The notes: a model not told the origin generated them from the letters alone. A stretch of 64,000 nucleotides of DNA from Selaginella moellendorffii (GCF_000143415.4 NW_003314290.1:1726454-1790453); one strand, 5' to 3'; shown: positions 1-45,491, counted from the stretch's first letter. Program-made: numbers and translations.

Positions 1-884
1 GTAGCGGTCAAGAGGATTGGCGGTGGATCGCGGCAGGAGGACAAGCAATTTAAGGCGGAGGTGATGTCGATTGGCAGCATCCATCACCTCAATCTCGTCA
101 AGCTGGATTTTGCCTGCATTCTCCCCACAACTTACTCGTCTACAAGTTCCTCGCCAATAGCTCGCTGGATAGATGGGATTTTGCCAAGGACAAGTACCTG
201 CCCTGGGCAACCAGGCTTTCCATCGCGCTCGACGTCGCTTGAGGGCTTGCGTATCTCCACGATGGATGCCGCGAGAAGGTACTCCGTCTAGACATCAAGC
301 CACAGAACATCCTCCTGGACGAGAAGATGAATGCCAAAATTGCCGACTTTGGATTCTCAAAGTTCATTGACAAGGACAAAACGCATGTCGTGACAGTCAT
401 GCGGGGCACGGTGGGATACATGGCTCCCGAGTGGCTCCACTCTCGTGTCACGGACAAGACGGAAGTCTATAGCTTTGGAATCGTCCTCCTGGAGCTTGTT
501 TGTAGCATAAAGGCCGTGGAGTGTTCCTTGTACTCGGACTCGCAGATGGACGTTGTGTTCCTCACCCAGACCGCTTTTAACAAGCTCCACAGTGGAAACG
601 CCAAGGACTTGGTGGACGATCGGCTGCTCAAAGCCGAGGACGGTGGTGGTTTTTTCTTGAGTGGCTTTGAGAACATCCTCCTGATCGGGTTATGGTGTAC
701 GCAGGAGGATCCCTTGCGGCGACCAACGATGTCTGTGGTGGTGAAGATGCTCGAGGGTGCCATGGATGTGTTGGCGCTCCCTCAGCTGGAGAGACCCGCT
801 GCACAGGATTCATCGCTCTTGGTGAGCAGCAGCGAGAGCTCGGGAGTGCAGATCTCCATCTCGGTTTTGGACTTGGCTCGCTAA
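1..884 (+). pseudogene. Receptor-like kinase pseudogene (kinase domain of a kiwellin-RLK-B paralog; 5' part outside window)
   Basis: Nearly colinear with 44590-45440. Has a 4-bp deletion near 106 (aagctggattttg vs aagctggttggattttg in the intact copy) and an in-frame TGA at 240-242. The C-lobe ORF 327-884 (DFG, GTVGYMAPEWL) is still open. Confidence 0.88.
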
Positions 885-1261
885 GTAGATTGCTTAATAA
901 GTTAATCAAAAGGAATGAACTTTCATTTAAGTATATATTTAGAATCCTAATGAGAAACCGGAAGGTCTGGAGGCGGAAGATCTGGAGGAGTTCAGGAAAT
1001 GGCTGAAGAGATCATCAAAACGGCACTTATAAACATGAATGAAACCACTATTTGGGTGATAAAGTTTTTGGCAAAGCGTGAAAGTTTGTACGTCTTTTTA
1101 TGTGCTGAGTCTTTTGGTATACACACACCACACGGCACGGGACGGTAGTTTGAGCACTTCAGTGTTGCTTTGGCAGTCCCTTTCAATGCCAATGGTTTTC
1201 TTGGCTTGGCCTAGAACAGAAAAATTCTTGCAAGAAAGGATGATAGCGATTTGCTTTTGCC

Positions 1262-1443
1262 AGTCAAAAGCTTTAAGTCTAGCTCGCTTCGCCTGGTCAA
1301 AAACGTCTCTTTATTATTCCAGACGACTCGTACAAGAAAGACCAATGCTCAGGTTGGAAAACCATTTGCTGAGCTTTTTTGTTATGACAACAGACGCGTT
1401 ATACACACATCACACGGCATGGCGATGCGTGGCTCCTATAAAA
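1262..1443 (+). promoter_or_regulatory. Promoter of the 3D-domain gene: two W-box cores and a TATA box
   Basis: agtcaa at 1262-1267 and ggtcaa at 1295-1300 (reverse TTGACY). ctcctataaaag at about 1432-1443, roughly 60 bp upstream of the ATG at 1499. Confidence 0.45.
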
Positions 1444-1498
1444 GGTAGAGCTCCGAGGTCATGCAAGAATTATACAGCGAGCAGCGCTGCGTTCATTC

Positions 1499-2092
1499 AT
1501 GGCTAAAAATCATCGATCTTCCGCTTCTCTTGTGCTCTTTCTCTCTTGCATGGCTCTGGGATTCTCAGTGGAGGCAGCCAGAGAGAGTTTCACGTACTAC
1601 TGGACTCCAGAGGAGAGTGATCTATGCGCCAACGAGGCCTCAAACACAGAAATCAAGGATTGCAATGACAACACGATAGCTTCCGTCTGTGGCAGTTTCA
1701 GTTCAAAAATCCATGAGGAGGGTGCTGGAAAGTTGAAGGACGGGCACTACGTGAATTGTCAAGAGAATTGCAACTGCTACTCCGTGACTGATGGTCCCAA
1801 GGGCAGCCGAGATAACGATTTGCATCTTTACGTGTCTATCGCGGTTCCAGATGAAGTGAAGTATCCCTTTGGATCAAAGCTCCAGATAGATCTGCTCCAA
1901 AACTTAGCGCTTCCCAACGGCAGGCAACACAATGGATGTGTTCGGGTGGATGACACGTGTTATGGATGCAACATGGACTTCTACGTGGGATCTGAGAGTA
2001 ACTACCATAATATTGATGATGAGGAGCTACATGATGCTACATTCTGGGATGTCAAGACTGATAACTGCGAGATCCTAGACTATGGCAGCTAG
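1499..2092 (+). CDS. Secreted Cys-rich 3D-domain (MltA-like DPBB) protein, 197 aa, intronless
   Basis: Signal peptide (LVLFLSCMALGFSVEA) and 10 Cys in the mature part. Motifs TYYW, EGAGKL, SIAVPD..YPFGS, LPNGRQHNGCVRVDDT...MDFYVG resemble 3D-domain (three-Asp) proteins as I recall them from bacteria and early-diverging fungi. TATA box upstream. Confidence 0.75.
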   Translation: MAKNHRSSASLVLFLSCMALGFSVEAARESFTYYWTPEESDLCANEASNTEIKDCNDNTIASVCGSFSSKIHEEGAGKLKDGHYVNCQENCNCYSVTDGPKGSRDNDLHLYVSIAVPDEVKYPFGSKLQIDLLQNLALPNGRQHNGCVRVDDTCYGCNMDFYVGSESNYHNIDDEELHDATFWDVKTDNCEILDYGS

Positions 2093-2199
2093 ATTGGAAA
2101 TGCTTGCACTTGGTTTGCTATTAAGAATAAATCGCACTAATAAATAGCTCATCTATCTTTTTATCTTTTTAGTTGCAAGTCTACGGGCGATTTAAATTT

Positions 2200-2555
2200 A
2201 TTGCTGGCGTCAGGGCTTTCCTGTCCAATTCCAGCCCGCCCAGGCTATTGTGTACGTGACTGGAGGGCTTGCAGACAAAACCGCTTTGGGATCGTATACT
2301 CCTGAGCTCGTACGCTATAGTTTCATTGCTAGTGGAGCGGTGGTCGCACTGGTGCTCTTATCAGGGCTTTTGTGCTGGAACCTCTTGCATCGATCCAATG
2401 TCACCACCGAGCAACAGCAGCAGCAGCAGGAGGAGCTCCTCATGAATGTGCCCCGGCAATTCAGTTACCAGGAGGTGTATCAAGGGATTCCAGAGCAAGG
2501 TGGGTGAAAGAGGGTTTGGGTGCTGCTGGTGGAGAGATTGTGGCAGGAGATGGAG
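2200..2555 (+). pseudogene. Scrambled RLK fragment (kissper end, TM, juxtamembrane, start of kinase)
   Basis: tttcctgtccaattcc..gcccgcccag matches the kissper end of RLK-B. Translation IASGAVVALVLLSGLLCW..PRQFSYQEVY. Multiple internal deletions. Confidence 0.7.
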
Positions 2556-6600: not shown

Positions 6601-9140
6601 CTATGAGTGTGTATGCTCCTCCAGGGGTGGCAGACTTGACGAAGAAAGGACCAAGCCACTATGGAGAGAACTTAGTAGCAAGGGTATGATCCTTGAGAAG
6701 AACAAACTGTCCATTGGTATTTGCTGCCTGGCCTTGAGTTGACACTTTTCAGTGTGAAGGTGCTCAATAGAATGTCGTCACTGTTCATCAAAGCTAGGAG
6801 ATCCCAGGCTCTAGCCTGAAGCTTGTCATCGTCAGAGAGCTGGAACTCAGCAGCATGTTGCAAAGAGAATTGGAGTGAAGGGACTTGTAGCTCCACTAAA
6901 AGCACAGCTTCAGTCCCATAGACCAATGAGAATGGTGTGGCTTAGATATCTATCTTGTACATCATCTAGAATGCCCACAGTGCTGTTTGTAAATGCTTGT
7001 GCCATTTCCTTGGATACTCATCCACCAACTTGGAGAGGACAGCCTTGAGGATCTTGTTGCTGGACTCAGCTTGCCTATTGAATTGTGGAAAGTAGCTACT
7101 TCTCTTGACATGTTGGATGTGAAGTTTCTGCAAGAGATACTCCACAACTCATCCAAGAAAAGCACCACCATGATCAGAAAAGAGAATAGCTAGAACCCTG
7201 AAGCAGCACATAATAAACTCATATAGGAACTTTGTTGTAGATGTCTCACCTAAGAGGAACTACCTCAATATACTTTGTGAAATAGTCCACTGCCATCAAA
7301 ATATAGCAATGTCCATCTGAGCTTGGGGGAGAAATAGGGCCGATGGAGTCTAAACCCCATTTGAAGAAAGGCTTAGTGGAGACCACAAACTGAAATGGAA
7401 GACGTGGAATACTGTTGTGGGGGTTGAATTGCTGGCACTGGAAACACATACTTGGCTGTGTTGTGGTGAATGGAAGGCCAGTAGAAACCATTTCATAAAA
7501 GAAGCTAAGCTGTTGTTTTGCCTGCAAAGTGTCTAGAGCACGAGTGAAAAGCTTGCAAGAGCTTGGGATTTCAGCCTCGGTGACATAGTGAAGCAAGACC
7601 CCATGTGTGGTGTGGTGATAGAGGGAACCTCCCAAGACACAATAATACCATGCTTGGATCCCCAAAGCTTGCTGCTGTGTCTTGGACATGTGGTCCAAAA
7701 GAGAGCTAGTGTCCAAGTGCTTTGCCACCTTAATCAGAGATGCTGGGACTGCAAACTCCTAAGCCATAGCCACTGTCAACTGGCTAGGGTCGAGAATACG
7801 CTTCTTCTTCAGCCCAAAACAAGGCTTGAACTCTTGAATCACAAATATCCACAATAAATTCCATGGAGCATGAGTGTTTTGCTGTAAAAGAAATGTTAGA
7901 ACATTGTTAGAAACTTGGAAAAAGATATCACTCCCCAGTAGAATGTGTTTGAAACCTTGGAGAGTATAAACCACTTCCACAGCCTCTTTTTCCACCTCAA
8001 GAAACTTGCTCTCGGACTTCCTGAATGAGTGAGATGCAAAGTTTGTTGCATGTGGTTGCTAAAGGCAAATCCCAAATGCCTCATCCCCAACCGTGACAAA
8101 GATCTCAAATGGTTAGCCCAATACCAGTGGTGAGAGAATGGGTGGCAACCTCAATGCTACTTTCAAATGATAAAAAATGTGTTGCTGAGTGTGTCCCCAA
8201 GAGAAAGAGGTGTCATGCTTGAGTACGGCCACCAGAGGACAAGTCAGAGCAGCATAATCCTGGATGAACCTCTTGAAGAATCCCGTCTTGCCAAGAAAAC
8301 TTCACAACTATTTCACTGTGGAAGGAGGAGGTTGCTGGATGATGTCCTAGCACTTGGATGCATGTGGAGAAATGCCTTGAGCAAAGACATCAAATCCCAA
8401 CCTTTGGTGACCCCAAACTTGCACTTTGCTGGGTTGAGTGAGAAATAGTGTCGTCAGCACTGACTAAAGACCTGTTCCAAATGTTGGAGATGATCCTGGA
8501 ACATCTAGGAAGCTGTGCATAAGTCATCCATGTACACACATAGAGCTCCTCCCAAGAGATCATGGAAAGAGTGTGTCATGAATCATTGAAACAGCATTGC
8601 ACAAACCAAAAGGGAGCACATTATAAGTGAAAACTCCCCAAGTTCTGCAAAAAGCAGTGAGTGCACGATCAGAAGGATGAATCTGAAGCTGGTTCAGAAT
8701 CCATCCATAAAAGAATAAAACTGGTGGTAGGCCATTTCGTCCACAATCTCATCAAGGAACGGTGTAGGAAAATGGTTGCAGGCTGTGACCTGGTTGAGCA
8801 CTCTAAATTCTATGCAAAGGTGGAGCTTGCTGTTCACTTTGCATGCTGGGATGACATTGGAGATCCATTGAGAGTGTTCTACTGGGTAAATAAAATCTGC
8901 AGCAAGCAACTTCTTGATTTCAATCTTGATGTCCGGCAAAAGGGAGTTGTTGAATCGTCGCATCTTTTGCTTCATAGGGTACCAGTCCCCATTGAGACAC
9001 ACTTCATGGCAATGATCATCAGGTTCGTCAAAGACTGCAGCAAAGTTGGGCTCTATGATGGTGTTTTGCCATGAAGGTGAACTTGCTTGAGTCTGTATGA
9101 GTGTGTTTTGAGTAGCGTTGTCTTGTTTGGGTTTGGACTC
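6600..9140 (-). mobile_element. Ty3/Gypsy (Athila/Tat-like) pol remnants: RT, RNase H, integrase
   Basis: Minus-strand fragments: RT FIYPVEHSQWISNV..FYSFMDGF; RNase H EKEAVEVVYTLQGFKHILLG; integrase KWGLDSIGPI..AVDYFTKYIE and VYGTEAVLLVE. Many stops and frameshifts. Confidence 0.85.
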
Positions 9141-9259
9141 GGGCGCCAAGGAGCAAGGCTCTGGTGGACGGGATTCTCAGCGTGCTGTCGCGCGGGCGGT
9201 ATGCTAGTTCTTCCCGTGTCCACGGCAATGCATGGCTCCTATAAAAGCTACGTCATATG

Positions 9260-10260
9260 CTTAGGAAAAAGGTAACAAATATTATGAAATTACCGAATCA
9301 TTTCTAAAGTCGTATTCCTCAAGCATCAGATAGGTTAAAGCACTTGGCAGGCACCTCTGCTTCACATGTTCTACCTGAAAAGTTCATGTGTACTTAACCA
9401 ATACATGAATAGTTACTTGAGCAGGATCAATTTCAAAACACATCACATCCTCAGCAGTGACTTCATCCCCGGCAAGCAATTCTTGTTCTATTGGACAATG
9501 ACTTGTTGATCATAAAACCGTGCTCTGCACTTGCCTAGAAGATTTTGCAGTGAGAAAGCTAGACAGGATTTGAAAGAAAAGCTTTCAAATGCCTCCGATA
9601 AAATTCTGGCTCGAGAGATGACATCATCCTTTAAAACCCTCTCCAGAATCTGCATGACAGAGTAAGTTTCACCAATCAAAGTTGCACCATACCTCTAGAT
9701 AAGAAGATTCTACAAAATAACGATTCTTTTTCAGAACTAGTTTTACTTTGCCATAGTTGAGAGTCGACTCTTTGATGAAATTCACAATCTTCTGCCGGAG
9801 CCTTGCTTTCGACAGCCATTCCATCACCGTAATGACTATCTGAGTCTCAAGACCAATGGAGACAGCCGGATACAAAGGATGTGGTGTGAGATTGTACTCA
9901 TGCATATGTTCTGGCCTGGAACAATGTTTCAAAGAAAATACTTGAGTGTAAGAACTTCTCATATCAGCAAGACCTGAAGCTTACTGACACACAGGCTCGG
10001 CAGTCACAATGAGAAAGCCGTATGCTTGCTTGTGTAGCGGAGAAAACGTCTTGAGAAAGATATGGCCATCAGGTCCAACCCAGAGTGGTCTCTTCTTGTG
10101 GTCTGGCTTTAGCTCGAGCTTGCTAAATCCATTTTCCCTGCGGTTTCATGCTTGTCGACTACATACAACATTCTAGTGCCAGTATGGGGATAAAGAAGAG
10201 GAGGAAGAGCAACACAATGATAAAGTATCACAACAAATCCCATCCTTCTTAAGGTTAGAA
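9260..10260 (-). pseudogene. XPB: XPB (TFIIH helicase) 5' gene fragment with introns, copy 1
   Basis: [78 protein letters not shown] match the XPB/ERCC3 N-terminus. Truncated and degraded. Confidence 0.85.
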
Positions 10261-11700: not shown

Positions 11701-11865
11701 CTTCTTCTAGAGCTTTTAAACCACTTTACACGTTTCTGCCATGGATCATCGCAGCATTTCCCTCGGGCTCGTGGTGGTGTTGATCACTTCATTTGCCAGC
11801 TCCACCGCACAGCAATTCTCTTCCTTCTGCAACAAGAGATGTGACTTTGCGCTTGTTTTGGCAGC

Positions 11866-19096: not shown

Positions 19097-19183
19097 TGTT
19101 GATCGCAAAAATCAATATCGTATGACGAACTGAGAGAGTTAGGGGTTTATGTATGAAGTGTTTGTACGCGGTTATGGCTGCGA

Positions 19184-34286: not shown

Positions 34287-37200
34287 GTATTGCTTCAAGT
34301 TGGGCATCCTTTTGTGTACATGAGCCATAAGTTTGATGCCATACAGCAGAACTGACTCGAGACAAGGAGTTGTATGTTGTGATTGCTGTTATGAAGGAAT
34401 GGCGACATTATTTATATGGATCGGACTTTTATGTGGATTTAGACCATCAGTCTCTCCAATATTTTAGTCAACAAAAGGATCTTCTTGGCTGCCTTGCTCG
34501 TTGGCAAAAGTTCCTATAGGAAATGTCTATTAAGATATGGTACAAGCATGGAGGTGAAAATAAGGTGGTTGATGCATTATCCAAGATGGTAAATTCTATC
34601 TCGTTCGTGAAGTTATCCAACGATCTCTTGGATGAGCTTAAGGAGTTTGCTGACTTCGACTCCTTTATCACTGATATTTGCGTGAAGGTTTTGTTGAGGG
34701 ACACCTCTACAGATTTGAAGAGTGACAAGTTTGCGTCATTTGAAATACAAGATGGAATCCTGGTGAATAAGGGACATGTAGTGGTTCCTTCATATTGACA
34801 AACTCATCAAACGGATTTTGGTTGAGTGTCATGATGTGCCAAGTGCTGGGCATCCGGGGGTATTGAGAATGTATATGTTGGTGAAGAGGCATTTCTTTTG
34901 GCCTGGGATGAAGTCAGATGTTGAGAAGTACGTACTTGGTTATTTGATCTATCAGGTGGTCAAAGTTGATCATCAAAAGCTTGCTGGCCTCTATCATCCT
35001 TTACATATATCCGAGAATAAGTGGGATAGCATCTCAATGGACTTTATCATTGGTTTGCCCAAAACCTTTCAAGGAAATGATGCTATTTGGGTTGTTGTGG
35101 ATCATTTGACGAAGGTGGCTCACTTCTTCTTTGTGAAGACAACAATAAAAGCTTCTGAACTTGCTCAGTTATTTGTAGACCAGTTATTCAGTCTCTATGG
35201 TTTGCTGGGTGACATTGTGAGTGATCGGGATCCTAAGGTCACATCCAAGTTTTGGCAAACGGTCTTTGAAAAGCTAGAGACTAAGCTGAGCATGAGTAGT
35301 GGTGAGCATCCACAATCTGATGGGCAAACAAAGCACATGAATCAACTATTAGAAGATATGCTAATATCTTTTATGGGAAACTTGACTTGATAGGGAGTAT
35401 GGGAGAAGTATTTGCCTTTGCTTCAGTTTGCTCACAATATTGCTCATCAATCAGCTATTGGCATGTCTCCCTTTATGGTGATGTATGGCTATGAGCCTAA
35501 GTCTCCTGTGAATTTGAATTTAGCTTTGGTTCGGGTTCCTTATGCTTATGATTTCCTGGAGGATATGCAAGACAAGCTTGAGTTGGCAAAATTGAACATG
35601 AGGCAAGCTCAAGAGCGAGACAAAAGATTGGCTAATGAATATCGTCGTTATCAAAAGTACAAAGTTGGTGATAAGGTTTTCTTTAAGCTGTTGTATGCAC
35701 AACAGTCTCTAAAAGGAGGTGGCAGTGCTAAGTTGTTTCCATGGTATTATGGACCTTGGATAATTTTACAGTGTGTGGGGGATTTTACATACACTTTGGA
35801 CTTGCTAGTTAGTTTGAAGATTCATCCAACGTTCCATGTGAGCAAACTTAAAGCATGTTTGCACTCTGGTGATATCGTGGATCAGTCCATCATCCAGGTT
35901 CCAAAGATTGATGCAAAGAAGGCTGGTCCAGCCAATATTCTTGCTCAAAGATTGGTGAAAATACACCAGAAGACAACTAAGGAGTTGTTAATTCAGTGGA
36001 ATGGTTATTCCATGGATAAAGCTATATAGAAAACTAAAGATGACATGAAGAGAGTGTTTCCGAGTTTTGGTTATGACTTGGATGACATTCCTGAGGAAGG
36101 GGAGAATTGAATTCTATAGCCGTATTGCTATATGATTTGAGCCATTTATTCTATTCTCATTCTTTTGTTTCCATGACCGTATTGTCATGTGAGAAAGCTG
36201 TATTGCCTTCTTTCTTTTATAGTTGTTTGTCACGATGTTGGTGTTGCTATTTGCACATTTTTTCTCCATGGCCGTATTGCCTTGAACTCCCTTCATGTGA
36301 GGCTTGTTTAGCTTCTCGAAGTTGTTATATAATGCTAGGTTATGAGGGAGGGGACACAAACTATATGAATATTCTAAGAATATTCCATGGCCTATGGGAT
36401 TTAAGGCCATAATGCCTCAAGGGTTGGGAGGCTAGCCTAGGGTTCACTCTCTTGTTCGTTTCACTAGGCAGGATTAGAAAGAAAAACTTTCTAAAAAATT
36501 TCTAGCTTCAAAGATGACATCATCCTTTAAAACCCTCTCCAGAATCTGCACGACAGAAAGTAAGTTTCACCAATCAAAGTTGCACCATACCTTTGGATAA
36601 GAAGATTTTACAAAATAATGATTCTTTTTTAGAACTAGTTTTACTTTGCCATAGTTGAGAGTCAACTCTTTGCCATTCCATCACTGTAATAACTATCTGA
36701 GACTCAAGACCAATGGAGAGAGCTGCATACAAAGAATGTGGTGTGAGATTGTACTCGTGCATATGTTCTAGCCTGGAATAAAGTTTCAAAGAAAATACTT
36801 GAGTGTAAGAACTTCTAATATCAGCGAGACCTGAAGCTTATTGACACACCAGCTTGGCAGTCACAATGAGAAAGTCATATGCTTGCTTGTGTAGCAGAGA
36901 AAATGTCCTATCAGGTCCAACCCAGAGTGGTCTCTTCTTGTGGTCTGGCTTTAGCTCGAACTTGCTAAAATCCATTACCAGTATGGGGATAAAGAAGAGG
37001 AAGAGCAACACAGTTCACAACAAATCCTATCCTTCTAAAGGTTAAAAGGAACTAGAAAGAGAAAAAAAAAAAAAGAGAGTAAAGAGATGAATGCTCTCTT
37101 CTTTTATGCCGTGATCAACAAGAATTTTGGGGGGTGGGTGGGGGCTTGACCAAAATTTCATCAAGGAAGAGATCTTATGGTGACTGTTAAATCAACCTTA

Positions 37201-38259
37201 ACTAGAGCTGTTATACATTAAGACTGAATTGTACAAAATATTTCACTAAGGTTTTTGAAATGGAGAAAAGAAAAAAACTTAAAATGATAGGGCAACATTG
37301 AGAGTAGCACCAGCCAAAGTGGTAGTAACAGTCACAGTGGTAGTAGCTAAAGGAACATCAACTGATTTAAACACAACAATTGGAGAAAAGAAAGAAGAGT
37401 GCTGGCAATTTATTTCTATAAAGGTTTAACATTTGGTTAAGTCATTTAAATCGCACAATGAGATTTTGAAGAGTTTTTTGAAAAGGTGTGCTCTATTAAA
37501 ATTTATATGGAAGTTACATTAAAATTAGTATTAATTCAATAGTGACAACATCATGTGCTAGAAGATTGGTGTGGTTCTTTTGGGTTATGTTTGAGTGGTT
37601 TACTTTCCCATGCGAAAAAGAATCAATTACTCTTACCTGTCCAAACATCCTCCAAAGCAGCCTCAATTCTCTCTCAAACCCCTCTGGTGGTGCTGGTCGG
37701 CTTGCGAAGGCAAGGATCTAGCTCTTCTTCTGGCATTGCGTTGGCAATGTCAAAATTCATAAGGTCTTTTGATCTGCTTCTGTGACACTGGCCGAGTTGC
37801 GAAGTTCAATTGAATGTTAGTCAGTCGTCACGATTAATGTTAAAATGTCTGAGCCCAAGTTCACACAAGTGCCCGACAGAAAATTACCATTTGACAATTG
37901 AGATTATAGAAACAGCTTTTGTGTTAGGAAGTGCAGATTATTTTCTGATACGATCTCAAAACTGTGGCACTAGGAACGTCAAATTTCAACTACAGTCGCT
38001 TTGGTGCAAGTGACCGAGAAGGTAACCAGACTTCCAGTGAGGCTCATAGGGGTGCGGACAAAGATGATTCTTTGAAATACCTCTTGTTTTCCCGTTGGCG
38101 AGAAGTAGAGAGTCCGGAGAACTTGGAAGAAGAGCAGAAGAAAGAGGAATTCCTCCAGGGAAGTCAAAAGCTTCAATCTGACAAGTCTAGCTTCTCACCA
38201 GACACAAGAAACTTTGGACTTTTTCTAGAGCTTTTAAACCACTTTACACGTTTCTGCCA

Positions 38260-39990
38260 TGGATCATCACAGCGTTTCCCTTCGGGCTCGTGGTGGTGTT
38301 GATCACTTCATTCGCCAGCTCCACCGCACAGCAATTCTCTTCCTTCTGCAACAAGAGATGCGACTTTGCACTTGTTCTGGCAGCCCCATTTGCAACCTTG
38401 TTAACCAGACTTGCGATGGCAATCCAGGAGATACCCCTTTATTGCCCAATTCCCGATTGTGAGCCTGCCCAGAGCGGGTAGAATGCACAATTCAGTATCC
38501 TTTTTTATTTATGGTGAGCCCCATTTGCTTATTTGGATTTGCATGCCACTTAAAGATTCTCAATAAGATAAGAAAAAATAAGATTACTATCTTGAGCATG
38601 ATCTAAAGAGAATGATGAAAAAAAAGAAAATATAAAAAGGAATACAAAACACAATGAAGGAAAACTTAAACCAAGCTTAGGTTATATACTTATAAATCCA
38701 CTACCAGTTAATAACATCTACTAATTATAATTTAACGTTACTAATTTAAATTTAGTCGCTCAATATTTAGGGCTGCGTGGCACAAAGCACCAAGTGAGCG
38801 TGGCAAAAGAGTAACCACGTAAGAGAGGGTGCATTTCTCCCCCAGAGCTTCATCTACTTGAATGCCACCGCCCACAACCCAGGTATCAGTACTTCACTTG
38901 CTCACTGTGCCCCTCACGACGGTCACGATGTGAGTCTTGTCCTTGTCGATGAGCTTTGAGAATCCAAAGTCGGCGGGCGCCCATGTGGTGCCCATCTTCT
39001 TATCCAGCAGGATGTTCTGGGGCTTGATGTCGAGATGGAGTTGGCATCCTTCGTGAAGATATGTGAGCCCTCGGGCAACATCAAGCGCGATGAAGAGCCT
39101 GGATGCCCAAGCCAGGCACTTGTCCTTGGCGAATCCAGCGAGTAGACGAGCAAGAGTGGAGGCAAAATCCAATCATCTTGACGAAATTGAGGTTGTGAAT
39201 GCTGCCGATCGACATCACGTCATGATCGACATCACGCCTTGGCAAATCCATGAGATTGCCGAGATCAAGCGGCCCCACGGCAGCTTGGAAGTCCGTCGCA
39301 AGAACTTCCACCACACTAGCCTTAAGAGCGCCAAGCTGATGAACGGCAGCAATGGCAATCTGTCTAGAGTTGGAATTCTCGCCCTTCCAGCTCCAACCGA
39401 CAGCCAAATCGAAGTAGTGCTTCTCACACCACTCGCGTCCCTCCCACCACCTCGATGCCGTGAAATTAAAAGGTTCCGAGTGCCTCCATTCTCGTGTCAC
39501 GCACAAGACCGACGTGTTCCAAAACCTGTCCCGGGACCATGGGGGTATGGTGGAATCTTTGGTTCCAACCTGAAGTGTGCCGGGATTCGCGACAAGCAGC
39601 ACCCCACGATTTGGAATCGTCCTTCTGCTGTTTGCAGCATAAAGGCCGTGGAGTGTTCCTTGGACTCGGACTCGCAGATGGACGTCGTGTTCCGCTTTCA
39701 ACAAGCTCCACAATGGAAACTCCGTAGTCTACGACCAACTGCTCAAAGCCAAGGATGGTTTCTTACCAACTGCTCAAAGCCAAGGATGGTTTCTTTCTGA
39801 GAGGCTTTCGAGCACATCGTCCAGATCGGGCTATGATCAGTTGGATCCCTTGCAGCGACCAGTTGTGATGAAGATTCTCAAGGGGTGCCATGGATGTGTT
39901 GGTGTTCCCTCAGCTGGAGAGACCTGCTGCACAGGCTTCGTCCCTCCTCATGAGCAGCAGTGCAAGTTCAGGAGTATAAATCTCTATCTC
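38260..39990 (+). pseudogene. Kissper-kiwellin RLK-B paralog pseudogene, copy 2, with internal inversion (about 38908-39473)
   Basis: Empty-site version of 11741/17287 (ctggcagccccatttgc). Kinase, TM and ectodomain pieces lie on the minus strand at 38908-39473, flanked by plus-strand pieces. Confidence 0.82.
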
Positions 39991-40143
39991 AGATAAGAAG
40001 GCGTTTTTACAAACAAGGAAACTTTGCAAGAAGAATTTATTCTATAGTGAACTCTTGGAGCAAGATAAAAATTATTTTTTTGGGTTGCTTAAGCAAACCT
40101 GTACATAGATTACGATGGTAATGGATATACCTAAAATATACTT

Positions 40144-40183
40144 GAATATTCTAGAATATTCTAGAATATTCTAGAATATTCTA
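40144..40183. repeat. (gaatattcta)4 palindromic tandem repeat in an AT-rich insertion of about 300 bp
   Basis: Seen directly. The segment is absent from the paralogous position near 18310. Confidence 0.8.
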
Positions 40184-40420
40184 CCATCTAACGGTTGTTA
40201 TTCATTTAGATTAATTTTGTATTTATAATTTATAAACTTTCTTAAACTTTTCAAGTATATTCTTTTTTATTCTATCATATGCAATAAGATTAATTATAAT
40301 TATAAAATTTACTTGATTAATTGAATTAATAAGTAAAAATAACACTACTATTAGAAAATCAAACATTGCAATTTATTTCTTTTTCATAAAGAAAATTCTC
40401 TTATATAAATACTGTTTTAA

Positions 40421-41135
40421 TCACCCACCGAATTTGTTCTTGTAGTCTGTCCACAAATCCTGTAAGCTCTTTCCAAGCAAATCACTGAACACAGACTCAC
40501 TCCACGCATCATTTGCAAGCCTCGCATTCATCTGCCACACAAAATCTCCCCAGAGGCTATTGCAGTAATCGAAGAAATAGGCAGTAACATCGTAGCCCTG
40601 GTCCCAGCGATCACCACCACCCGGCTTCACCCAGTGAGATGGAGCGAGCCCGGCTTTGAGCCGGACATAATCAGCCACTCCTTCAGTCACTCCACTGGGA
40701 GTTCCTTGCCCAAAGTACTGCCAGACGTGAGCCATCTCGTGGTATATTACCCCTGTGATCCCCTCGTAGTTATCGGCAGATGGAGCATTAAACTGGATCT
40801 GGAACTCGCCGGGACACCGTCCCAAATGTGATAGCAACCGCACCCTGCTGGAGCTGCTTCTCGACCGTGAAGACAACCTTGGTCACTAGTTTTGTGGGAA
40901 CACTGTCGAGACCATTGTGCAACAGCGGCGGGATGAAGTTGATTGCATCGCCCAGGACTTTGAAGGCCCCGGAGATCCCCATCACCGAGTTGAAGCGCTT
41001 GCCACCGTCGGTGTCCTCGGCATTGTTTGCTCCGACCAGGACAATGTCTGCATGGACACGGGAAGTGATAACGAGAACAAGGGACAAGCAGCTCAAAAGA
41101 TGTGCAGTGGAAACTCTCAGACAAGTTTGCGTCAT
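40421..41135 (-). pseudogene. BSP/PR-17 copy 2, frameshifted
   Basis: Nearly identical to 18380-19096 but 2 bp shorter (gggacaccgt vs gggactgcccgt at about 40816), which splits it into two ORFs. Confidence 0.9.
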
Positions 41136-41453
41136 TGTTAATCGCAAAAATCAATATCGTGTGAGGAACGCAGAAAGTTGGCTCATGAAGGGGTTTATAA
41201 AGTGTTTGTACGCGGTTATGGCTACGAAGTCAACGTATTTTGACTACGCGGATTTGGCTTCGACACGGCACTATATGGAAAAATGCTTGAGCCCGGGTTG
41301 ACTTCTAGTGTGTGAGACTAGCGTGATGACCAACTACACCACCCAGACTGTGACACTAAGTTGGTTTCCACAACTAATTTACAATGAAGCTGATTGCTTT
41401 TCCAGAGATATTTCTTGTGGGACGTTTTAGAGTTTCAATATAGTGGTGTAACA

Positions 41454-43388
41454 TTACAAACTGGTGGAGCTGAAGGAGGATTCAGGTGGTCGCAAGCTAA
41501 AGTTTCTCGAACTACCATCACTTGAAGGTGGTGGCAACTCAAGAACATCTATGCTACCGTCGAGCATATCCAATACGTTTCTCATGGAGGGTCGCATTGC
41601 TGGTTCGGCTTGGATACACCACAATCCAATCTTCAGGTATCTCTCGGCATCCTTGAAATCCAAGCCACTGCTGCTGGCGATATCGTCGTTTAGATTATTG
41701 ACAAAGAGCTTCTCGTCAATGAGCTCCACAACTTTGCCACTGTAAAACATGCTCAATGCGGCTGTACCAAGGAAGTGCACTGTCGGTTGTGAGGAGGAGG
41801 AGGAGGAGGATGTCAAAGGATGAAATTCCAAGGCCCGCTTGGAGGTTACAAGCTCAAGCAGCACAATTCCAAAGCTGTAGACGTCGGTCTTGTCCGTGAC
41901 TTTGGTATGGAGCCACTCGGGCGCCATGTATCCGGGAGTTCCTCGCATGACAGTCACCACCTGACTCTTTCCTCGCTCGGCGAGCTTGCTCAGGCCAAAG
42001 TCGGAGATCCTGGCTCGCAAGTTCTCGTCCAGGAGGATGTTTTGCGGCTTGATGTCCAGGTGAAGAACTTGCTCCCGGCATCCCTCATGGAGATACGTGA
42101 GTCCTCGAGCAACATCTATCGCGATTGAGTGTCTCTGGTTCCAGTCCAGCAGGATTCCGCCAGCTTTGCCATCATTGTATTCGGTGAAGATCCACTTGTC
42201 CAATGAGCCATTGGGCATAAACTCGTAGACAAGCAATGCAGCTGGTCCCTGGATGCAAAATCCCCGGAGCCTTACCAAGTTGAAGTGATGGATGCTTCCA
42301 ATGGACATCACCTCGGCCTTAAACTGTGACTGTCCTTGTGTAGAGCCTTCTATCTCTACATCCATTTTCTTGACAGCAACCAGGCTTCCATCTGCAAGCT
42401 CCCCCTTAAAGACGGATCCAAATCCGCCAGCTCCGAGCATGAACTGTGGAGCAAAGTTTCCAGTCGCTGCTCTCAAGTCGTGATAGCTAAACTGGTGTGG
42501 AAGTAACTTATCGAGCCTCATTCCATCCATGAGCGCTTGCTCATCTTTTCTTCGCCTCTCAAGAGATCTCCTCCATCGCCTGGTTGCTGTGAAGGCTGCG
42601 ACACTAACCAACACCACCACCACAGCACCCACTATGCCAGCAATTAATCCCAGCTTGCGGTTCATGCGTCTTGGAGACGGTAATTGTGGAGGATTACTGT
42701 TAGTAGTGATACTCCAGGTGATATTTTCTACGATTCCAATGCCTGGATCATACCCAAGCTGCCTCCACACTTGCTCGTTCGCTGCCACGGCATTTGGAGC
42801 ACAGGGCTCCGTGAACGAAAAATTGCCGAGACACCCTCCCCCGGAGTAGCATTGAGCCACGACTCTGGCCACCACAGTTCGTCCATTTGGAGCTAAAACT
42901 TGGATATTCGTGGAGCACAAGCTTCGGTCTTGGTTATACCACCCAGTGGCCACCGCCGCCATGAGATCAAAATCCCACCCGAAGGACGTGCACGACCTGA
43001 GAGAACCCGGATTTGAGAGATTGAATCTTGTGACATATAAGACGGCATTGTTGGTCTCTTGAAAAATTGGAGAGCAAGTGAAAGTCCTGTAAGCCAGGCC
43101 TGGGACGCAGCAATTTGGGCAGTCTGGAGCGATGGTGTCATTGAAAACAAAGCTGGAACTGGGCTGGCAAACGTCTGAATCGCTAAGGTATGGCTCGGAT
43201 CGATTGCTCGCTTGGTAGCAGGACGAGTTCCGGAGTGAACGGTTGCCGCCGAGCATGGGCTCCGGGAAACAAAGGGACCCATTTTGGCAATCGGTCGACG
43301 AAGAACATACCTGTTGTTGGGCTTGCGAGTAGTGGAAGCTCTTTGCGCTACATGCTAGGACGATGATGAAGCACAGGAGTACCTCCAT
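41454..43388 (-). CDS. Kiwellin-ectodomain receptor-like kinase A (644 aa, intronless, non-RD)
   Basis: Signal peptide; Cys-rich N-terminus; kiwellin/ripening-related motifs CCVPG..FTCSP, AVATGWYN, C..NI.V.APNGRTVVARVVAQC, GC..EPC.PN.V..VW..LG....G...ITWS; single TM; kinase GAGGFG, VAVKK, HLDIKPQNILLD, DFG, GTPGYMAPEWL. Confidence 0.92.
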   Translation of the reverse strand: MEVLLCFIIVLACSAKSFHYSQAQQQVCSSSTDCQNGSLCFPEPMLGGNRSLRNSSCYQASNRSEPYLSDSDVCQPSSSFVFNDTIAPDCPNCCVPGLAYRTFTCSPIFQETNNAVLYVTRFNLSNPGSLRSCTSFGWDFDLMAAVATGWYNQDRSLCSTNIQVLAPNGRTVVARVVAQCYSGGGCLGNFSFTEPCAPNAVAANEQVWRQLGYDPGIGIVENITWSITTNSNPPQLPSPRRMNRKLGLIAGIVGAVVVVLVSVAAFTATRRWRRSLERRRKDEQALMDGMRLDKLLPHQFSYHDLRAATGNFAPQFMLGAGGFGSVFKGELADGSLVAVKKMDVEIEGSTQGQSQFKAEVMSIGSIHHFNLVRLRGFCIQGPAALLVYEFMPNGSLDKWIFTEYNDGKAGGILLDWNQRHSIAIDVARGLTYLHEGCREQVLHLDIKPQNILLDENLRARISDFGLSKLAERGKSQVVTVMRGTPGYMAPEWLHTKVTDKTDVYSFGIVLLELVTSKRALEFHPLTSSSSSSSQPTVHFLGTAALSMFYSGKVVELIDEKLFVNNLNDDIASSSGLDFKDAERYLKIGLWCIQAEPAMRPSMRNVLDMLDGSIDVLELPPPSSDGSSRNFSLRPPESSFSSTSL

Positions 43389-43652
43389 AGCTGCAGACGA
43401 CCACTGTTCATAGCGACGACCATGGGATTATATGATCAAAACTTCAAATAGATGAGATCGGAGAAGTCGCATCAGTGCTTTTTCTATGGTCATGTTTAGT
43501 GTGAAGCTCTGGCAGTATCCTGATGGCAAGTAAGAAAAGTCAAACAAGGATCCTTGGAAGGTTCATATAGCGCTTCCAATTCTTAAAGTTTTTCATTGAC
43601 TTTTAGATAGAGCTTTTAAACTAACTTACCTGGTCCAGGGCAAGCTCCAGCC
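43389..43652. promoter_or_regulatory. 264-bp bidirectional promoter region of the RLK pair with two W-boxes
   Basis: Divergent ATGs at 43388 and 43653. agtcaa at 43538-43543 and ttgact at 43596-43601. Confidence 0.6.
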
Positions 43653-45491
43653 ATGGATCGTCGCACCACTTTCTTCGCGCTCGCGATGATCTTGATCTCT
43701 TCACTCGCCGGCGCCACCGCACAACAGTTCTCCTCCTCCTGCGGCACGAGATGCGACTCTACGCGCGATTGTTCTGGCGGCCTCGTTTGCAATCCTATTA
43801 GCAAGACCTGCGATGGCGATCCATCAGCTAGCACTCTTTCCTGCCCAATTCTCGGCTGCGAGCCCGCCCAGACCTTCGTCTACTCGAATGCCACCGCCCA
43901 CAACCCAGCACTTTGCTTCGACAACACCACCTACCAGTTCTTCAATTGCTCGCCGCAAGAACAGCCTCGCAATTTCGCGGCATTCTACTTCATCGAGCTG
44001 GAGGAGTCCCCTACGAGTTGCAATCGCTCGACGCCGCCAAGGAATTCGGAGCTCCTGGCGTCCATGTCCACGGGGTGGTTCGCCAATGGATCGTCGTGCC
44101 ACAGAGAGATCGTGATCACGGCGGAGAATGGGCTGAGCGTGACGGCGACAGTGATCGACCAGTGTGGATCGAACATCGGGTGTACCGCAGACACTGGATT
44201 CTATGGGCCGTGCTCGCCCAGATCGCTGGGAGGGACGAGAGCGGTGTGGGAAGCGCTGGGGCAGACCTACTTTGATAATGTGTTGGCGGTCACTTGGAGC
44301 TGGAAGGGCGAGGATTCCAACCTGAGAGATCGCAATATCGCCATTGCCGTGGTTTCCAGTGGAGCGATCGTCGTCTTGGCGCTCCTAGGGCTAGTGTGGT
44401 GGAAGTTCTTGCGACGCTCATCCAATGCTGCCGTGAGGGAGCGGCCGCTCGATCTCGGCAACCTCGCGGATTTGCCACGGCAATTCAAGTACCAGGAGGT
44501 GTATCGAGCGACCAAGGGATTCCAGAGCAAGGTGGGACAAGGAGGATTTGCGAGTGTGTTCAAGGGAACGTTGCCCGGCGGGGAGATTGTGGCAGTCAAG
44601 AGGATCGGAGGTGGAGTGCGGCAGAGGGACAAGCAATTCAAGGCGGAGGTGATGTCGATTGGCAGCATCCATCACCTCAATCTGGTCAAGCTGGTTGGAT
44701 TTTGCCTGCATTCTCCACACAACTTGCTCGTCTACGAGTTCCTCCCGAATGGCTCGCTAGATGGATGGATTTTCGCCAAGGAGAAATGCCTGTCCTGGGG
44801 ATCCAGGCTCTCCATCGCGCTCGACGTTGCCCGGGGGCTCGCCTATCTCCACGAAGGATGCCGCGAGAAGGTACTCCATCTAGACATCAAGCCCCAGAAC
44901 ATCCTCCTGGACGAGAAGATGGGCGCCAAGATCGCCGACTTTGGGTTCTCCAAGCTCATCGACAAGGACGAGAGTCACGTCGTGACGGTCATGCGAGGCA
45001 CGGTGGGATACATGGCTCCCGAGTGGCTCCACTCTCGAGTCACGGAGAAGACTGACGTCTATAGCTTTGGGGTCGTCCTTCTCGAGCTCGTTTGCGGCAT
45101 GAAGGCCGTGGAGTGTTCCTCGGGCTCGGGCTCACAGATGGACGTCGTGTTCCTCGGACAAACCGCTTTCAACAAGCTGGACAGTGGAAACTCGATGGAC
45201 TTGGTGGACGATCGGCTGCTCAAAGCCGAGGATGGTGGTGGTTTCTCCTTGACTGGCTTTGAGAACATCCTCCGGATCGGGTTATGGTGTACGCAGGAGG
45301 ATCCCTTGCAGCGACCAACGATGTCTGTGGTGGTGAAGATGCTCGAGGGTGCCATGGATGTGTTGGCATTCCCTCAGCTGGAGAGACCCGCTGCACAGGC
45401 TTCTCCACTCCTGGCGAGCTCGGGGCAATTCTCCATCTCGGTCTCAGGAAGAGATCGTCTCAACTCTCGGATGGAGCTCGATAAAAGCTAG
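43653..45491 (+). CDS. Kissper-kiwellin-ectodomain receptor-like kinase B (612 aa, intronless, non-RD)
   Basis: Signal peptide; kissper-like C-x3-C-x5-C-x5-C-x6-C-x10-C; kiwellin core FNCSP, ASMSTGWFANGSSCHREIVITAENGLSVTATVIDQCGS..GC..PC..AVWEALG..VTWS; TM; kinase VAVKR, HLDIKPQN, DFG, GTVGYMAPEWL. Confidence 0.93.
   Translation: MDRRTTFFALAMILISSLAGATAQQFSSSCGTRCDSTRDCSGGLVCNPISKTCDGDPSASTLSCPILGCEPAQTFVYSNATAHNPALCFDNTTYQFFNCSPQEQPRNFAAFYFIELEESPTSCNRSTPPRNSELLASMSTGWFANGSSCHREIVITAENGLSVTATVIDQCGSNIGCTADTGFYGPCSPRSLGGTRAVWEALGQTYFDNVLAVTWSWKGEDSNLRDRNIAIAVVSSGAIVVLALLGLVWWKFLRRSSNAAVRERPLDLGNLADLPRQFKYQEVYRATKGFQSKVGQGGFASVFKGTLPGGEIVAVKRIGGGVRQRDKQFKAEVMSIGSIHHLNLVKLVGFCLHSPHNLLVYEFLPNGSLDGWIFAKEKCLSWGSRLSIALDVARGLAYLHEGCREKVLHLDIKPQNILLDEKMGAKIADFGFSKLIDKDESHVVTVMRGTVGYMAPEWLHSRVTEKTDVYSFGVVLLELVCGMKAVECSSGSGSQMDVVFLGQTAFNKLDSGNSMDLVDDRLLKAEDGGGFSLTGFENILRIGLWCTQEDPLQRPTMSVVVKMLEGAMDVLAFPQLERPAAQASPLLASSGQFSISVSGRDRLNSRMELDKS

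What the first reader, a model, noticed from the sequence alone, without database searches (positions are those of the whole stretch)
1..45491. Four-gene putative apoplastic immune module duplicated as a block, with one intact copy of each gene
Seen: a recurring order (3D gene/promoter - XPB fragment - unknown fragment - broken RLK-B - BSP - RLK-A - RLK-B) at about 9.2-20.4 kb and 22.2-45.5 kb, plus the tail of an earlier unit at 1-2.1 kb. Losses are complementary: the 3D gene is intact only in the first unit, BSP only in the middle unit, and RLK-A and RLK-B only in the last. Three of the four products appear to share the DPBB fold. Inference: a functional cluster in which secreted hydrolase-like proteins (3D, PR-17 HExxH) could release ligands or act as outputs for the kiwellin-RLKs, with selection keeping one working copy of each.
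Basis: partly seen in the sequence, partly recalled or inferred. Interest (0 to 1): 0.78.

Follow-up and report, generated by a model that had tools for sequence, protein, structure and literature searches.

The report
Decaying tandem defence-gene array, spikemoss
This stretch of the spikemoss Selaginella moellendorffii holds repeated copies of a roughly 9-kb block carrying two kiwellin receptor-kinase genes, a PR-17 gene and remnants of a fungal-type MltA-like gene; most copies are broken, which is the ordinary fate of duplicated defence genes and does not show that the four genes work together.

Summary
Unit 1 (9265-20435) and unit 2 (22373-45419) are collinear copies, about 10-18% diverged outside coding sequence, and 1-884 is the tail of an earlier unit. 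Within the window exactly one copy of each gene is intact:
- MltA-like "3D" gene: 1499-2092
- PR-17/BSP: 18380-19096
- kiwellin kinases RLK-A and RLK-B: 41454-43388 and 43653-45491

The other copies are truncated, frameshifted or reduced to 31-117-bp remnants. Three retrotransposon insertions, each private to one unit, explain the different unit lengths.

The gene identities are right. However, "one intact copy each" is expected in 18-51% of neutral-decay trials, and the units also carry junk (an XPB fragment, an older dead RLK-B). No BSP paralogue of 63-80% identity turned up to match those of 3D and RLK-B on other scaffolds. Only the RLK-B-to-3D adjacency recurs at a second locus.

I read this as a birth-and-death tandem array with gene conversion. 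Earlier notes of this scan describe the kinase pair and the kinase-plus-3D block on other pieces of this genome.

The parts
1..884 (+). RLK-B0: kinase tail of the preceding unit, a pseudogene
   Evidence: 88% identical to 44589-45419. It has a 4-bp deletion near position 104 and an in-frame TGA at the codion equivalent to RLK-B residue 394, near position 240.
1499..2092 (+). Intact 3D/MltA-like secreted protein gene (197 aa, signal peptide, intronless)
   Evidence: Single ORF. A profile search gives 451 relatives, the nearest outside Selaginella being Entomophthora, Conidiobolus and Dimargaris. Ten of 40 aligned homologues carry PF06725. The AF2 model has pLDDT 91.2 and Foldseek ranks MltA 2ae0/7esj first at E 1e-5. 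D152 and D160 are conserved in 39/40 and 36/40 sequences.
2196..2529 (+). RLK-B-type transmembrane/juxtamembrane fragment
   Evidence: tblastn matches RLK-B residues 234-303. DNA is 66.7% identical to 44353-44587.
6675..9176 (-). Decayed gypsy-type retroelement debris between the 3D gene and unit 1
   Evidence: RT_RNaseH hit at 7762-8058, E 3.6e-7. RT- and integrase-like ORFs by eye.
9219..9249 (+). 31-bp remnant of the 3D promoter at the left edge of unit 1
   Evidence: 90% identical to 22207-22237, which in turn aligns to 1418-1448.
9265..20435 (.). Unit 1 of the tandem array
   Evidence: Collinear with 22373-45419. Substitution divergence per block is K 0.03-0.18.
9488..9962 (-). XPB/ERCC3 helicase gene fragment, a passenger pseudogene; its counterpart lies within 36464-37175
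   Evidence: Helicase_C_3 hit on ORF 9669-9962, E 4.8e-16. The neighbouring ORF 9488-9679 continues the XPB sequence by eye. Exons were scanned singly and never joined.
11741..18159 (+). psi-RLK-B' of unit 1: an older dead RLK-B-type gene split by the copia insertion
   Evidence: tblastn pieces cover residues 1-52 (11741-11899), 43-87 (17289-17417) and 419-582 (17613-18159).
11866..17286 (+). Copia-type LTR retrotransposon, present only in unit 1
   Evidence: DUF4219, zf-CCHC, gag_pre-integrs and SH3_retrovirus hits. LTRs of about 175 bp run TG...CA with K 0.108. A degenerate 5-bp target duplication is present, and the empty site is seen at 38383/38384.
18380..19096 (-). BSP1: intact PR-17/BSP gene (238 aa from the ATG, signal peptide, HEMAH)
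   Evidence: PF04450 at 4e-51. Translation. The exact protein is on record (P0170), and a 98.7%-identical intact copy (P0293) lies on scaffold 3,093,912. There are 4 W-boxes in the 384 bp upstream against 0.43 expected.
19481..19795 (-). RLK-A1: 3' tail only (about residues 541-644), with a 1-bp deletion
   Evidence: tblastn 92%. Lesions and Ks 0.083. Junction sequence.
19799..20454 (+). RLK-B1: kinase C-terminal half only (from about residue 368)
   Evidence: tblastn 83%. DNA is 89.6% identical to 44773-45409 and 91% to 183-817.
20622..20714 (-). Inverted 93-bp remnant of the 3D gene start
   Evidence: 86% identical to 1480-1571 in reverse orientation.
22209..22325 (+). Forward remnant of the 3D promoter plus the first 37 nt of coding sequence, at the left edge of unit 2
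   Evidence: 73.6% identical to 1418-1536.
22373..45419 (.). Unit 2 of the tandem array, the last unit
   Evidence: Collinear with unit 1. It is followed by unrelated genes: RPA3 at 47357-47773, an EFR3-like gene, and an IDD zinc-finger gene.
22668..36463 (+). Gypsy-type LTR retrotransposon, present only in unit 2, itself carrying a nested element
   Evidence: Retrotrans_gag at 22770-23519; Integrase_H2C2, rve and SH3_Tf2-1 at 34818-36029. LTRs of about 114 bp have K 0.134. A CTAG target duplication is present, and the empty site in unit 1 lies near 9540.
24378..32012 (+). Young nested LTR element with 1.7-kb LTRs that hold 12/46-bp tandem repeats
   Evidence: LTR pair 24378-26087 and 30199-32012, 98.8% identical, TG...CA ends, 5-bp target duplication.
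38281..39934 (+). psi-RLK-B' of unit 2, with its middle part (38903-39434) inverted
   Evidence: tblastn pieces cover residues 8-74 (+), 200-451 (-) and 457-582 (+). 17618-17701 matches 39002-38919 in reverse.
40424..41135 (-). BSP2: PR-17/BSP copy with a 2-bp deletion at nt 319 (frameshift)
   Evidence: Two tblastn pieces in different frames, 94-95% identical. Lesion and Ks 0.045. RefSeq XP_024536701.1 skips 40886-40799 as an 88-nt GT-AG intron and so drops 30 conserved residues.
41454..43388 (-). RLK-A2: intact kiwellin-ectodomain non-RD receptor kinase (644 aa)
   Evidence: KWL1 at 8e-21 and Pkinase at 1.3e-43. Solved kiwellins 6ti2 and 6fpg at 1e-21. Signal peptide, transmembrane segment and the VAVK, HLD and DFG motifs are seen in the translation.
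43389..43652 (.). 264-bp divergent promoter shared by RLK-A2 and RLK-B2
   Evidence: ORF coordinates. 2 W-boxes against 0.3 expected.
43653..45491 (+). RLK-B2: intact kiwellin-ectodomain non-RD receptor kinase (612 aa)
   Evidence: KWL1 at 9e-20 and Pkinase at 9e-45. Kiwellin 4pmk at 4e-21, covering residues 28-216. Translation. A 95%-identical intact copy, XP_024528945.1, lies on scaffold 3,093,912.

Best explanation
This is the distal end of a birth-and-death tandem array in Selaginella moellendorffii.

**Origin.** A compact, intronless ancestral block of about 9 kb was copied head to tail at least three times, probably by unequal crossing-over. Its order was BSP(-), RLK-A(-), a 264-bp divergent promoter, RLK-B(+), then a 3D/MltA-like gene about 0.6 kb downstream. 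The block also carried passenger debris: an XPB fragment and an older dead RLK-B.

**Decay.** The redundant copies then decayed independently:
- a 3-kb deletion removed the heads of RLK-A1 and RLK-B1;
- small indels broke RLK-B0 and BSP2;
- the 3D gene was reduced to stubs in three places;
- three LTR retrotransposons inserted into single units.

Patches of much lower divergence (BSP, the RLK-A tail) indicate later gene conversion between units.

**Function.** Each intact gene most likely acts on its own in extracellular defence:
- two non-RD receptor kinases with kiwellin ectodomains;
- a zinc-binding PR-17 protein;
- a secreted MltA-like glycan-cleaving enzyme of fungal type.

**Shown versus inferred.** The anatomy and gene identities are shown. 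The unequal crossing-over, the gene conversion and the defence roles are inferred.
For: - **Collinear units.** Units diverge by K 0.10-0.18 in non-coding blocks.
- **Private TE insertions.** Each has target-site duplications and an empty site in the sister unit. LTR K is 0.108, 0.134 and 0.012.
- **Independent lesions in each copy**.
- **Passenger pseudogenes copied along with the genes**.
- **Mosaic divergence.** BSP has Ks 0.045 against Ks 0.29 for the RLK-B tails of the same two units. That is 7 synonymous differences where 16-46 are expected, P<0.01.
- **Neutral expectation.** Every family keeps at least one intact copy in 18-51% of neutral-decay cases.
- **BSP is local.** BSP has no 63-80% paralogue, although 3D and RLK-B have them on other scaffolds.
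- **Decay elsewhere too.** On scaffold 3,093,912 the RLK-A model has lost its kinase C-lobe. On scaffold 2,305,360 the RLK-B-like gene is truncated next to two 3D-like pieces.
- **End of the array.** The array stops at about 45.5 kb, next to housekeeping-type genes.
Against: - RLK-B tails show Ka/Ks of 0.27-0.34, so the copies were under purifying selection for part of their history.
- The RLK-B-to-3D adjacency recurs in a paralogous locus at 70-76% identity, which could reflect more than chance linkage.
- All four genes are intronless, tightly packed and encode extracellular or cell-surface proteins.
- W-boxes are enriched upstream of BSP and, weakly, in the RLK promoter, compatible with shared defence regulation.
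- No expression data, no upstream sequence and no genomes of related species could be examined.
Confidence: 0.7

Rival explanations
1. The four genes form a co-adapted apoplastic immune module. The secreted hydrolase-like proteins (3D, PR-17) release ligands for, or act downstream of, the kiwellin receptor kinases. Selection keeps one working copy of each gene.
For: - All four products are secreted or cell-surface proteins of defence-associated types.
- The composite arrangement is compact: BSP, RLK-A, RLK-B, 3D.
- W-boxes are enriched upstream of BSP.
- PRp27 acts in immunity, and its authors list release of elicitors from the pathogen as one possibility (PMC9322406).
- Exactly one intact copy of each gene lies in the window.
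Against: - No unit in the window holds all four genes intact.
- The retention pattern is not improbable under neutral decay.
- The units also copy dead passengers.
- BSP lacks the older paralogues that 3D and RLK-B have elsewhere.
- The RLK-A model on the other scaffold is damaged.
Confidence: 0.08
2. The old, possibly functional unit has three genes: the head-to-head RLK-A/RLK-B pair plus the 3D/MltA-like gene. BSP is only a local neighbour caught in the latest round of tandem duplication. The MltA-like enzyme could cut microbial wall glycans whose fragments the DPBB-type kiwellin ectodomains bind.
For: - A chimeric gene model on scaffold 2,305,360 (P0291) joins an RLK-B-like ectodomain (76% identical) to two 3D-like pieces (72% identical).
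- 3D paralogues lie on at least four other scaffolds.
- Earlier notes of the scan report the pair plus 3D copied to several places; I tested this only in part.
- Both protein types belong to glycan-binding DPBB fold classes.
Against: - At every locus seen so far, at least one partner is broken (note s1-433185).
- Adjacency can persist simply because segmental duplications copy neighbours.
- There is no biochemical or expression evidence.
- The only kiwellin ligand I know of is a protein (Cmu1 of Ustilago maydis), not a glycan. This is from my own knowledge, apart from the 6fpg hit.
Confidence: 0.17
3. The repeats are an assembly artefact, for example two haplotypes or mis-joined contigs laid side by side, and not real tandem copies.
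For: The published S. moellendorffii assembly is known to contain both haplotypes (my own knowledge). Highly similar copies of BSP, RLK-A and RLK-B do exist on a second scaffold.
Against: - Units differ by 10-18% in non-coding sequence, far more than BSP differs between the two scaffolds (98.7% protein identity).
- Each unit has its own old TE insertion with target-site duplications.
- Each unit has its own distinct deletions.
- There are no Ns in the window.
Confidence: 0.03

Closest known systems
Birth-and-death tandem arrays of plant receptor-kinase, NLR and PR genes
   Same: - Head-to-tail segmental copies.
- Independent pseudogenisation of copies.
- Transposon insertions private to single copies.
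- Patches homogenised by gene conversion.
- One or a few intact members left.
   Different: The unit here holds four non-homologous genes plus passenger fragments. Two of the families are unusual for plants: kiwellin-ectodomain kinases and a fungal-type MltA-like protein.
Hydrolase-releases-ligand systems of plant immunity, such as Arabidopsis LYS1 with LYM1/LYM3/CERK1 (my own knowledge)
   Same: A secreted wall-cleaving enzyme and a cell-surface receptor act in the same compartment.
   Different: As far as I know, the genes of those systems are not clustered, and the enzyme-receptor link was shown experimentally. Here only physical linkage is seen and nothing functional was tested.
Kiwellins (kiwifruit kiwellin 4pmk; maize ZmKWL1 6fpg, which binds the Ustilago maydis effector Cmu1)
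   Same: The ectodomains of RLK-A and RLK-B match solved kiwellins at E 1e-16 to 1e-21. RLK-B covers the protein from the kissper region onward.
   Different: Known kiwellins are free secreted proteins. Here the domain is fused to a transmembrane segment and a non-RD kinase. The kiwellin family review (PMC9813671) does not mention kinases.
PR-17 / BSP proteins (NtPRp27, HvPR-17, WCI-5)
   Same: PF04450 across the whole protein, a signal peptide, an HExxH motif, and 41-59% identity to seed-plant and fern BSPs.
   Different: This is a lycophyte member. It lies 318 bp downstream of a receptor-kinase gene and has one frameshifted tandem twin.
MltA / YuiC 3D-domain lytic transglycosylases
   Same: The fold matches: MltA is the top Foldseek hit, and the profile hits YuiC at E 0.009. 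The conserved Asp residues of the 3D motif are present.
   Different: The protein is small, secreted, cysteine-rich and eukaryotic. It is below the Pfam threshold itself. Its nearest relatives are in Entomophthoromycotina and Kickxellomycotina fungi, not bacteria or plants.
Head-to-head paired immune receptors (for example the rice RGA4/RGA5 NLR pair; my own knowledge)
   Same: Two diverged receptors (41% identical) are transcribed divergently from a short shared promoter and are copied as a unit.
   Different: These are receptor kinases, not NLRs. Pairing is inferred from gene order only, and copies often lose one partner.

Membership tests
Kiwellin (PF24300) | Pfam KWL1 match above the gathering score | tested here: met
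   RLK-A scores 75 bits and RLK-B 71.6 bits against a cut-off of 27.
Kiwellin (PF24300) | Sequence similarity to solved kiwellin structures | tested here: met
   4pmk, 4x9u, 6fpg and 6ti2 at E 1e-16 to 1e-21.
Kiwellin (PF24300) | Free, soluble secreted protein | tested here: not met
   The domain is followed by a transmembrane segment and a kinase within one ORF.
RLK/Pelle receptor kinase | Signal peptide, single transmembrane segment, and a complete kinase domain with the catalytic Lys, HxD and DFG motifs | tested here: met
   Pkinase at 1e-43 to 9e-45. VAVK, HLDIKPQN and DFG are seen in the translations. The residue before the catalytic Asp is L, so the kinases are non-RD.
PR-17 / BSP (PF04450) | BSP domain across the mature protein, with the HExxH motif | tested here: met
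   174 bits against a cut-off of 23.8. HEMAH is present.
PR-17 / BSP (PF04450) | Induced by pathogens (the definition of a PR protein) | not testable with these tools
   There is only an indirect hint: 4 W-boxes in 384 bp upstream against 0.43 expected.
3D domain / MltA-like lytic transglycosylase (PF06725) | Direct Pfam 3D match | tested here: not met
   No Pfam family even at E up to 10 for the protein itself. Ten of 40 aligned homologues do match, the best at 1.9e-13.
3D domain / MltA-like lytic transglycosylase (PF06725) | MltA-type fold including the double-psi beta-barrel | tested here: met
   The AF2 model has pLDDT 91.2. The best Foldseek hits are MltA chains at E 1e-5 to 1e-4 with probability 1.0. 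YuiC, barwin-like proteins and expansins rank lower.
3D domain / MltA-like lytic transglycosylase (PF06725) | Conserved aspartates of the 3D motif | tested here: met
   D152 is conserved in 39/40 and D160 in 36/40 sequences. D118 is conserved in 21/40, and 10 further sequences have Asp one position earlier. Equivalence to the MltA catalytic Asp is by motif only and was not checked by superposition.
3D domain / MltA-like lytic transglycosylase (PF06725) | Glycan-cleaving activity | not testable with these tools
   This needs an enzyme assay.
Functional cluster of non-homologous genes (co-adapted module) | The same gene set is linked at independent loci or in other species | tested here: inconclusive
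   The RLK-B-to-3D adjacency recurs on scaffold 2,305,360. No close BSP paralogue was found elsewhere. No relatives of the RLK-B ectodomain or of close 3D outside S. moellendorffii were found by word search. Genomic context could not be fetched.
Functional cluster of non-homologous genes (co-adapted module) | Co-expression and shared phenotype | not testable with these tools
Functional cluster of non-homologous genes (co-adapted module) | Retention pattern beyond the neutral expectation | tested here: not met
   The probability that every family keeps at least one intact copy is 0.18-0.51 under neutral decay.
Birth-and-death tandem array | Collinear diverged copies with independent disabling lesions and insertions private to single copies | tested here: met

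The most novel reading that the evidence does not exclude
The kiwellin receptor-kinase pair and the fungal-type MltA-like secreted enzyme form an old, co-duplicated receptor-plus-enzyme unit. At this locus a PR-17 protein has joined them. The horizontally acquired wall-cleaving enzyme produces the glycan fragments that the DPBB-type kiwellin ectodomains sense. The tandem array is a reservoir from which working combinations are kept.
Probability: 0.1. Interest if true: 0.75.

Novelty: new member of a known kind. Interest (0 to 1): 0.3.

Why it matters
If the four genes really formed a receptor-plus-enzyme module, this would be a rare case of plant immune components encoded as a physically linked unit of non-homologous genes, including a probable fungal gene transfer. 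That would give a direct handle on what kiwellin receptor kinases sense.

As it stands, the locus is a well-resolved example of how a compact spikemoss genome makes and loses defence-gene copies. It also warns that "one intact copy of each" is the default outcome of redundancy and is not evidence of joint function.

The useful by-products are precise lesion and TE maps, the sign of gene conversion over BSP, and the recurrence of the RLK-B-to-3D adjacency.

Tried and rejected
- **The look-up of encoding contigs.** I tried it to read upstream of the window and the other haplotype.
- **Direct Pfam and PDB sequence searches with the 3D ORF or its three-member alignment.** These gave nothing. Only the 40-sequence profile and the fold search placed it.
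- **Profile-profile comparison of the 3D family with the RLK-B kiwellin ectodomain.** It gave no relationship (probability 0.1%). The shared DPBB fold is a fold-class resemblance only.
- **Microhomology at the unit-1 deletion junction (19795/19799).** I found none convincing.
- **Similarity among the sequences downstream of the three RLK-B tails.** I found none.
- **Ka/Ks of BSP1 against BSP2.** There are too few changes to be informative (12 non-synonymous, 7 synonymous; P=0.12).
- **Pfam scans of the "unknown fragment" ORFs (11407-11844, 37964-38302) and of 1078-1506.** These gave nothing.
- **Literature search for kiwellin plus receptor kinase, or plus Selaginella.** It found no description of such receptors or of this cluster.
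- **Spliced models.** The XPB exons and the two BSP2 pieces were searched separately.

Full report
**Source.** The window comes from Selaginella moellendorffii, from a scaffold of 1,886,115 bp. The 3D, RLK-A, RLK-B and BSP proteins are all on record for that contig, and their closest relatives carry S. moellendorffii names.

**Is the repeat real?** Yes.

Self-BLAST shows two collinear units, 9265-20435 and 22373-45419. The kinase tail of a third, earlier unit lies at 1-884.

Aligned blocks differ by JC K 0.10-0.18 where they are non-coding or dead. The units differ in length because of three LTR retrotransposons, each present in one unit only:
- A copia-type element at 11866-17286 in unit 1.
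- A gypsy-type element at 22668-36463 in unit 2.
- A young element at 24378-32012, nested inside the gypsy element.

The first two show target-site duplications and a matching empty site in the sister unit; the nested element shows its own 5-bp target duplication.

Without these insertions, and allowing for a 3-kb deletion in unit 1, the unit is about 9 kb. The array ends near 45.5 kb. Beyond it lie an RPA3 gene, an EFR3-like gene and an IDD zinc-finger gene.

**What are the genes?**

*RLK-A and RLK-B.* RLK-A (41454-43388, minus strand, 644 aa) and RLK-B (43653-45491, plus strand, 612 aa) are single-ORF genes, head to head across 264 bp.
- Both have a signal peptide, a kiwellin ectodomain, one transmembrane segment and a complete kinase. 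The kiwellin domain matches Pfam KWL1 and the solved kiwellins 4pmk, 6fpg and 6ti2.
- The catalytic Asp is preceded by Leu, so the kinases are non-RD.
- The two proteins are 41% identical to each other.

*BSP1.* BSP1 (18380-19096, minus strand, 238 aa from the first ATG) is a full PR-17/BSP protein with a signal peptide and HEMAH.

*The "3D" ORF.* This ORF (1499-2092, 197 aa) has no Pfam hit of its own.
- A profile search found 451 relatives.
- Ten of 40 aligned relatives carry the 3D domain.
- The nearest relatives outside Selaginella are in Entomophthora, Conidiobolus, Neoconidiobolus and Dimargaris.
- A confident AF2 model (pLDDT 91) hits MltA lytic transglycosylases first. YuiC, barwin-like proteins and expansins rank further down.
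- The motif aspartates are conserved.

This is a fold-class resemblance only, because 3D and kiwellin show no detectable sequence relationship.

**State of each copy.**
- **RLK-B0 (1-884):** a 4-bp deletion and an in-frame TGA.
- **RLK-A1 and RLK-B1:** unit 1 lacks the equivalent of 41769-44772. Only the last ~100 codons of RLK-A1 (19481-19795, itself with a 1-bp deletion) and the kinase C-terminal half of RLK-B1 (19799-20454) remain.
- **BSP2 (40424-41135):** a 2-bp deletion at nt 319. RefSeq XP_024536701.1 hides it behind an 88-nt GT-AG intron that removes 30 conserved residues.
- **3D:** apart from the intact gene, it survives only as stubs at 9219-9249, 20622-20714 (inverted) and 22209-22325.
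- **Passengers:** each unit also carries an older, fragmentary RLK-B-type pseudogene (11741-18159; 38281-39934, partly inverted in unit 2) and an XPB helicase fragment (9488-9962 and its counterpart).

Within the window the count is one intact copy of each of the four genes, out of about 13 copies in all.

**Does the pattern imply a module?** I think not, for five reasons.

1. If copies break at random at the observed rate (9 of 13), every family keeps at least one intact copy in 18% of cases. At break rates of 0.5-0.6 the figure is 33-51%. In addition, any single gene that is useful on its own would keep one copy.
2. The units copy dead passengers as faithfully as genes. The unit is therefore defined by breakpoints.
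3. The block copied between units 1 and 2 already carried only a 3D stub.
4. 3D has paralogues of 63-79% identity on at least four other scaffolds, and RLK-B has one of 76%. A BSP paralogue of that age would have topped the BSP search, yet only this locus and its twin on scaffold 3,093,912 appear among the best 120 of 632 hits. BSP therefore looks like a local neighbour.
5. On scaffold 3,093,912, probably the other haplotype, BSP (98.7% identical) and RLK-B (95%) are intact, but the RLK-A model has a scrambled kinase C-lobe.

That is exactly where RLK-A0 should be.

**What speaks for some coupling?**
- The old chimeric gene model P0291 on scaffold 2,305,360 joins an RLK-B-like ectodomain (76% identical) to two 3D-like pieces (72% identical). 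RLK-B followed by 3D is therefore an adjacency older than this array. Earlier notes (s1-433185 and others) say the same, and also that no copy keeps all partners intact.
- The composite block is compact and intronless: BSP, 318 bp, RLK-A, 264 bp, RLK-B, 615 bp, 3D.
- W-boxes are enriched upstream of BSP (4 against 0.43 expected) and slightly in the RLK promoter.
- PRp27, a PR-17 protein, contributes to immunity by an unknown mechanism. Its authors list release of elicitors from the pathogen as one possibility (PMC9322406).

These points keep a three-gene or four-gene functional reading alive at low probability.

**An unexplained detail.** Divergence between units 1 and 2 is mosaic.
- BSP coding sequence has K 0.029 (Ks 0.045) and the RLK-A tail has K 0.039.
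- Flanking blocks and the RLK-B tails have K 0.10-0.18 (Ks 0.29).
- The private TE insertions have LTR K 0.11-0.13.

The simplest reading is gene conversion between units after the TE insertions. BSP2's frameshift would then be very recent.

**Literature.** I found no paper describing kiwellin receptor kinases or this cluster. The kiwellin family review does not mention kinases.

**Verdict.** The locus is a birth-and-death tandem array of defence-type genes. The four-gene "module kept by selection" is not supported by the retention pattern. Only the RLK-B-to-3D linkage shows any recurrence.

Noticed in passing
window 40799-40886 (minus strand): RefSeq model XP_024536701.1 (LOC9645954) for BSP2 bridges a 2-bp frameshift with an 88-nt GT-AG 'intron'. 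That stretch is plain coding sequence in BSP1, and 30 conserved residues are lost. This is probably an annotation workaround and not a real intron.
   Followed up: partly
window 17706-19795 versus 39467-41768: BSP, the RLK-A tail and part of the older dead kinase are 3-6 times less diverged between the units than their flanks. They are also less diverged than the TE insertions private to each unit. This looks like a gene-conversion tract.
   Followed up: partly
window 24378-32012; also 5184-5438: A young nested LTR element has 98.8%-identical LTRs of 1.7 kb, each holding a 12/46-bp tandem-repeat array of about 350-600 bp, and only about 4.1 kb between the LTRs. A related degenerate 12/48-bp array sits at 5188-5432.
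   Followed up: partly
window 38903-39434: The middle of the older dead RLK-B-type gene is inverted in unit 2 relative to its own ends and to unit 1 (17618-17701 matches 39002-38919 in reverse).
   Followed up: no
protein P0291 (SELMODRAFT_413345), scaffold of 2,305,360 bp: An old gene model fuses an RLK-B-like kiwellin ectodomain to two 3D-like pieces. It marks a paralogous, decayed RLK-B/3D locus.
   Followed up: partly
protein P0006 (XP_024528844.1), scaffold of 3,093,912 bp: The RLK-A counterpart on the presumed other haplotype is 92% identical but loses the kinase C-lobe after about residue 510. This looks like a frameshift. RefSeq names it an L-type lectin receptor kinase although it has a kiwellin ectodomain.
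   Followed up: partly
window 19097-19480 and 41136-41453: There is a cluster of W-box cores (TTGACY) upstream of both BSP copies: 4 and 3 sites where about 0.4 are expected.
   Followed up: partly
window 47357-47773 (-), 48371-48736 (+), 54067-56454 (+): Just beyond the array lie an RPA3 (Rep_fac-A_3) gene, an EFR3-like exon, and an IDD/BIRD zinc-finger gene whose 549-aa downstream ORF has no Pfam match.
   Followed up: no
window 46763-46979: An 82-bp tandem repeat of 2.9 copies lies between the array and the RPA3 gene.
   Followed up: no
window 1499-2092: The MltA-like gene has its nearest relatives outside Selaginella in Entomophthoromycotina and Kickxellomycotina fungi, and no other plant appeared among the hits I looked up. 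This is consistent with an old fungus-to-plant transfer, as earlier notes of the scan suggest.
   Followed up: partly
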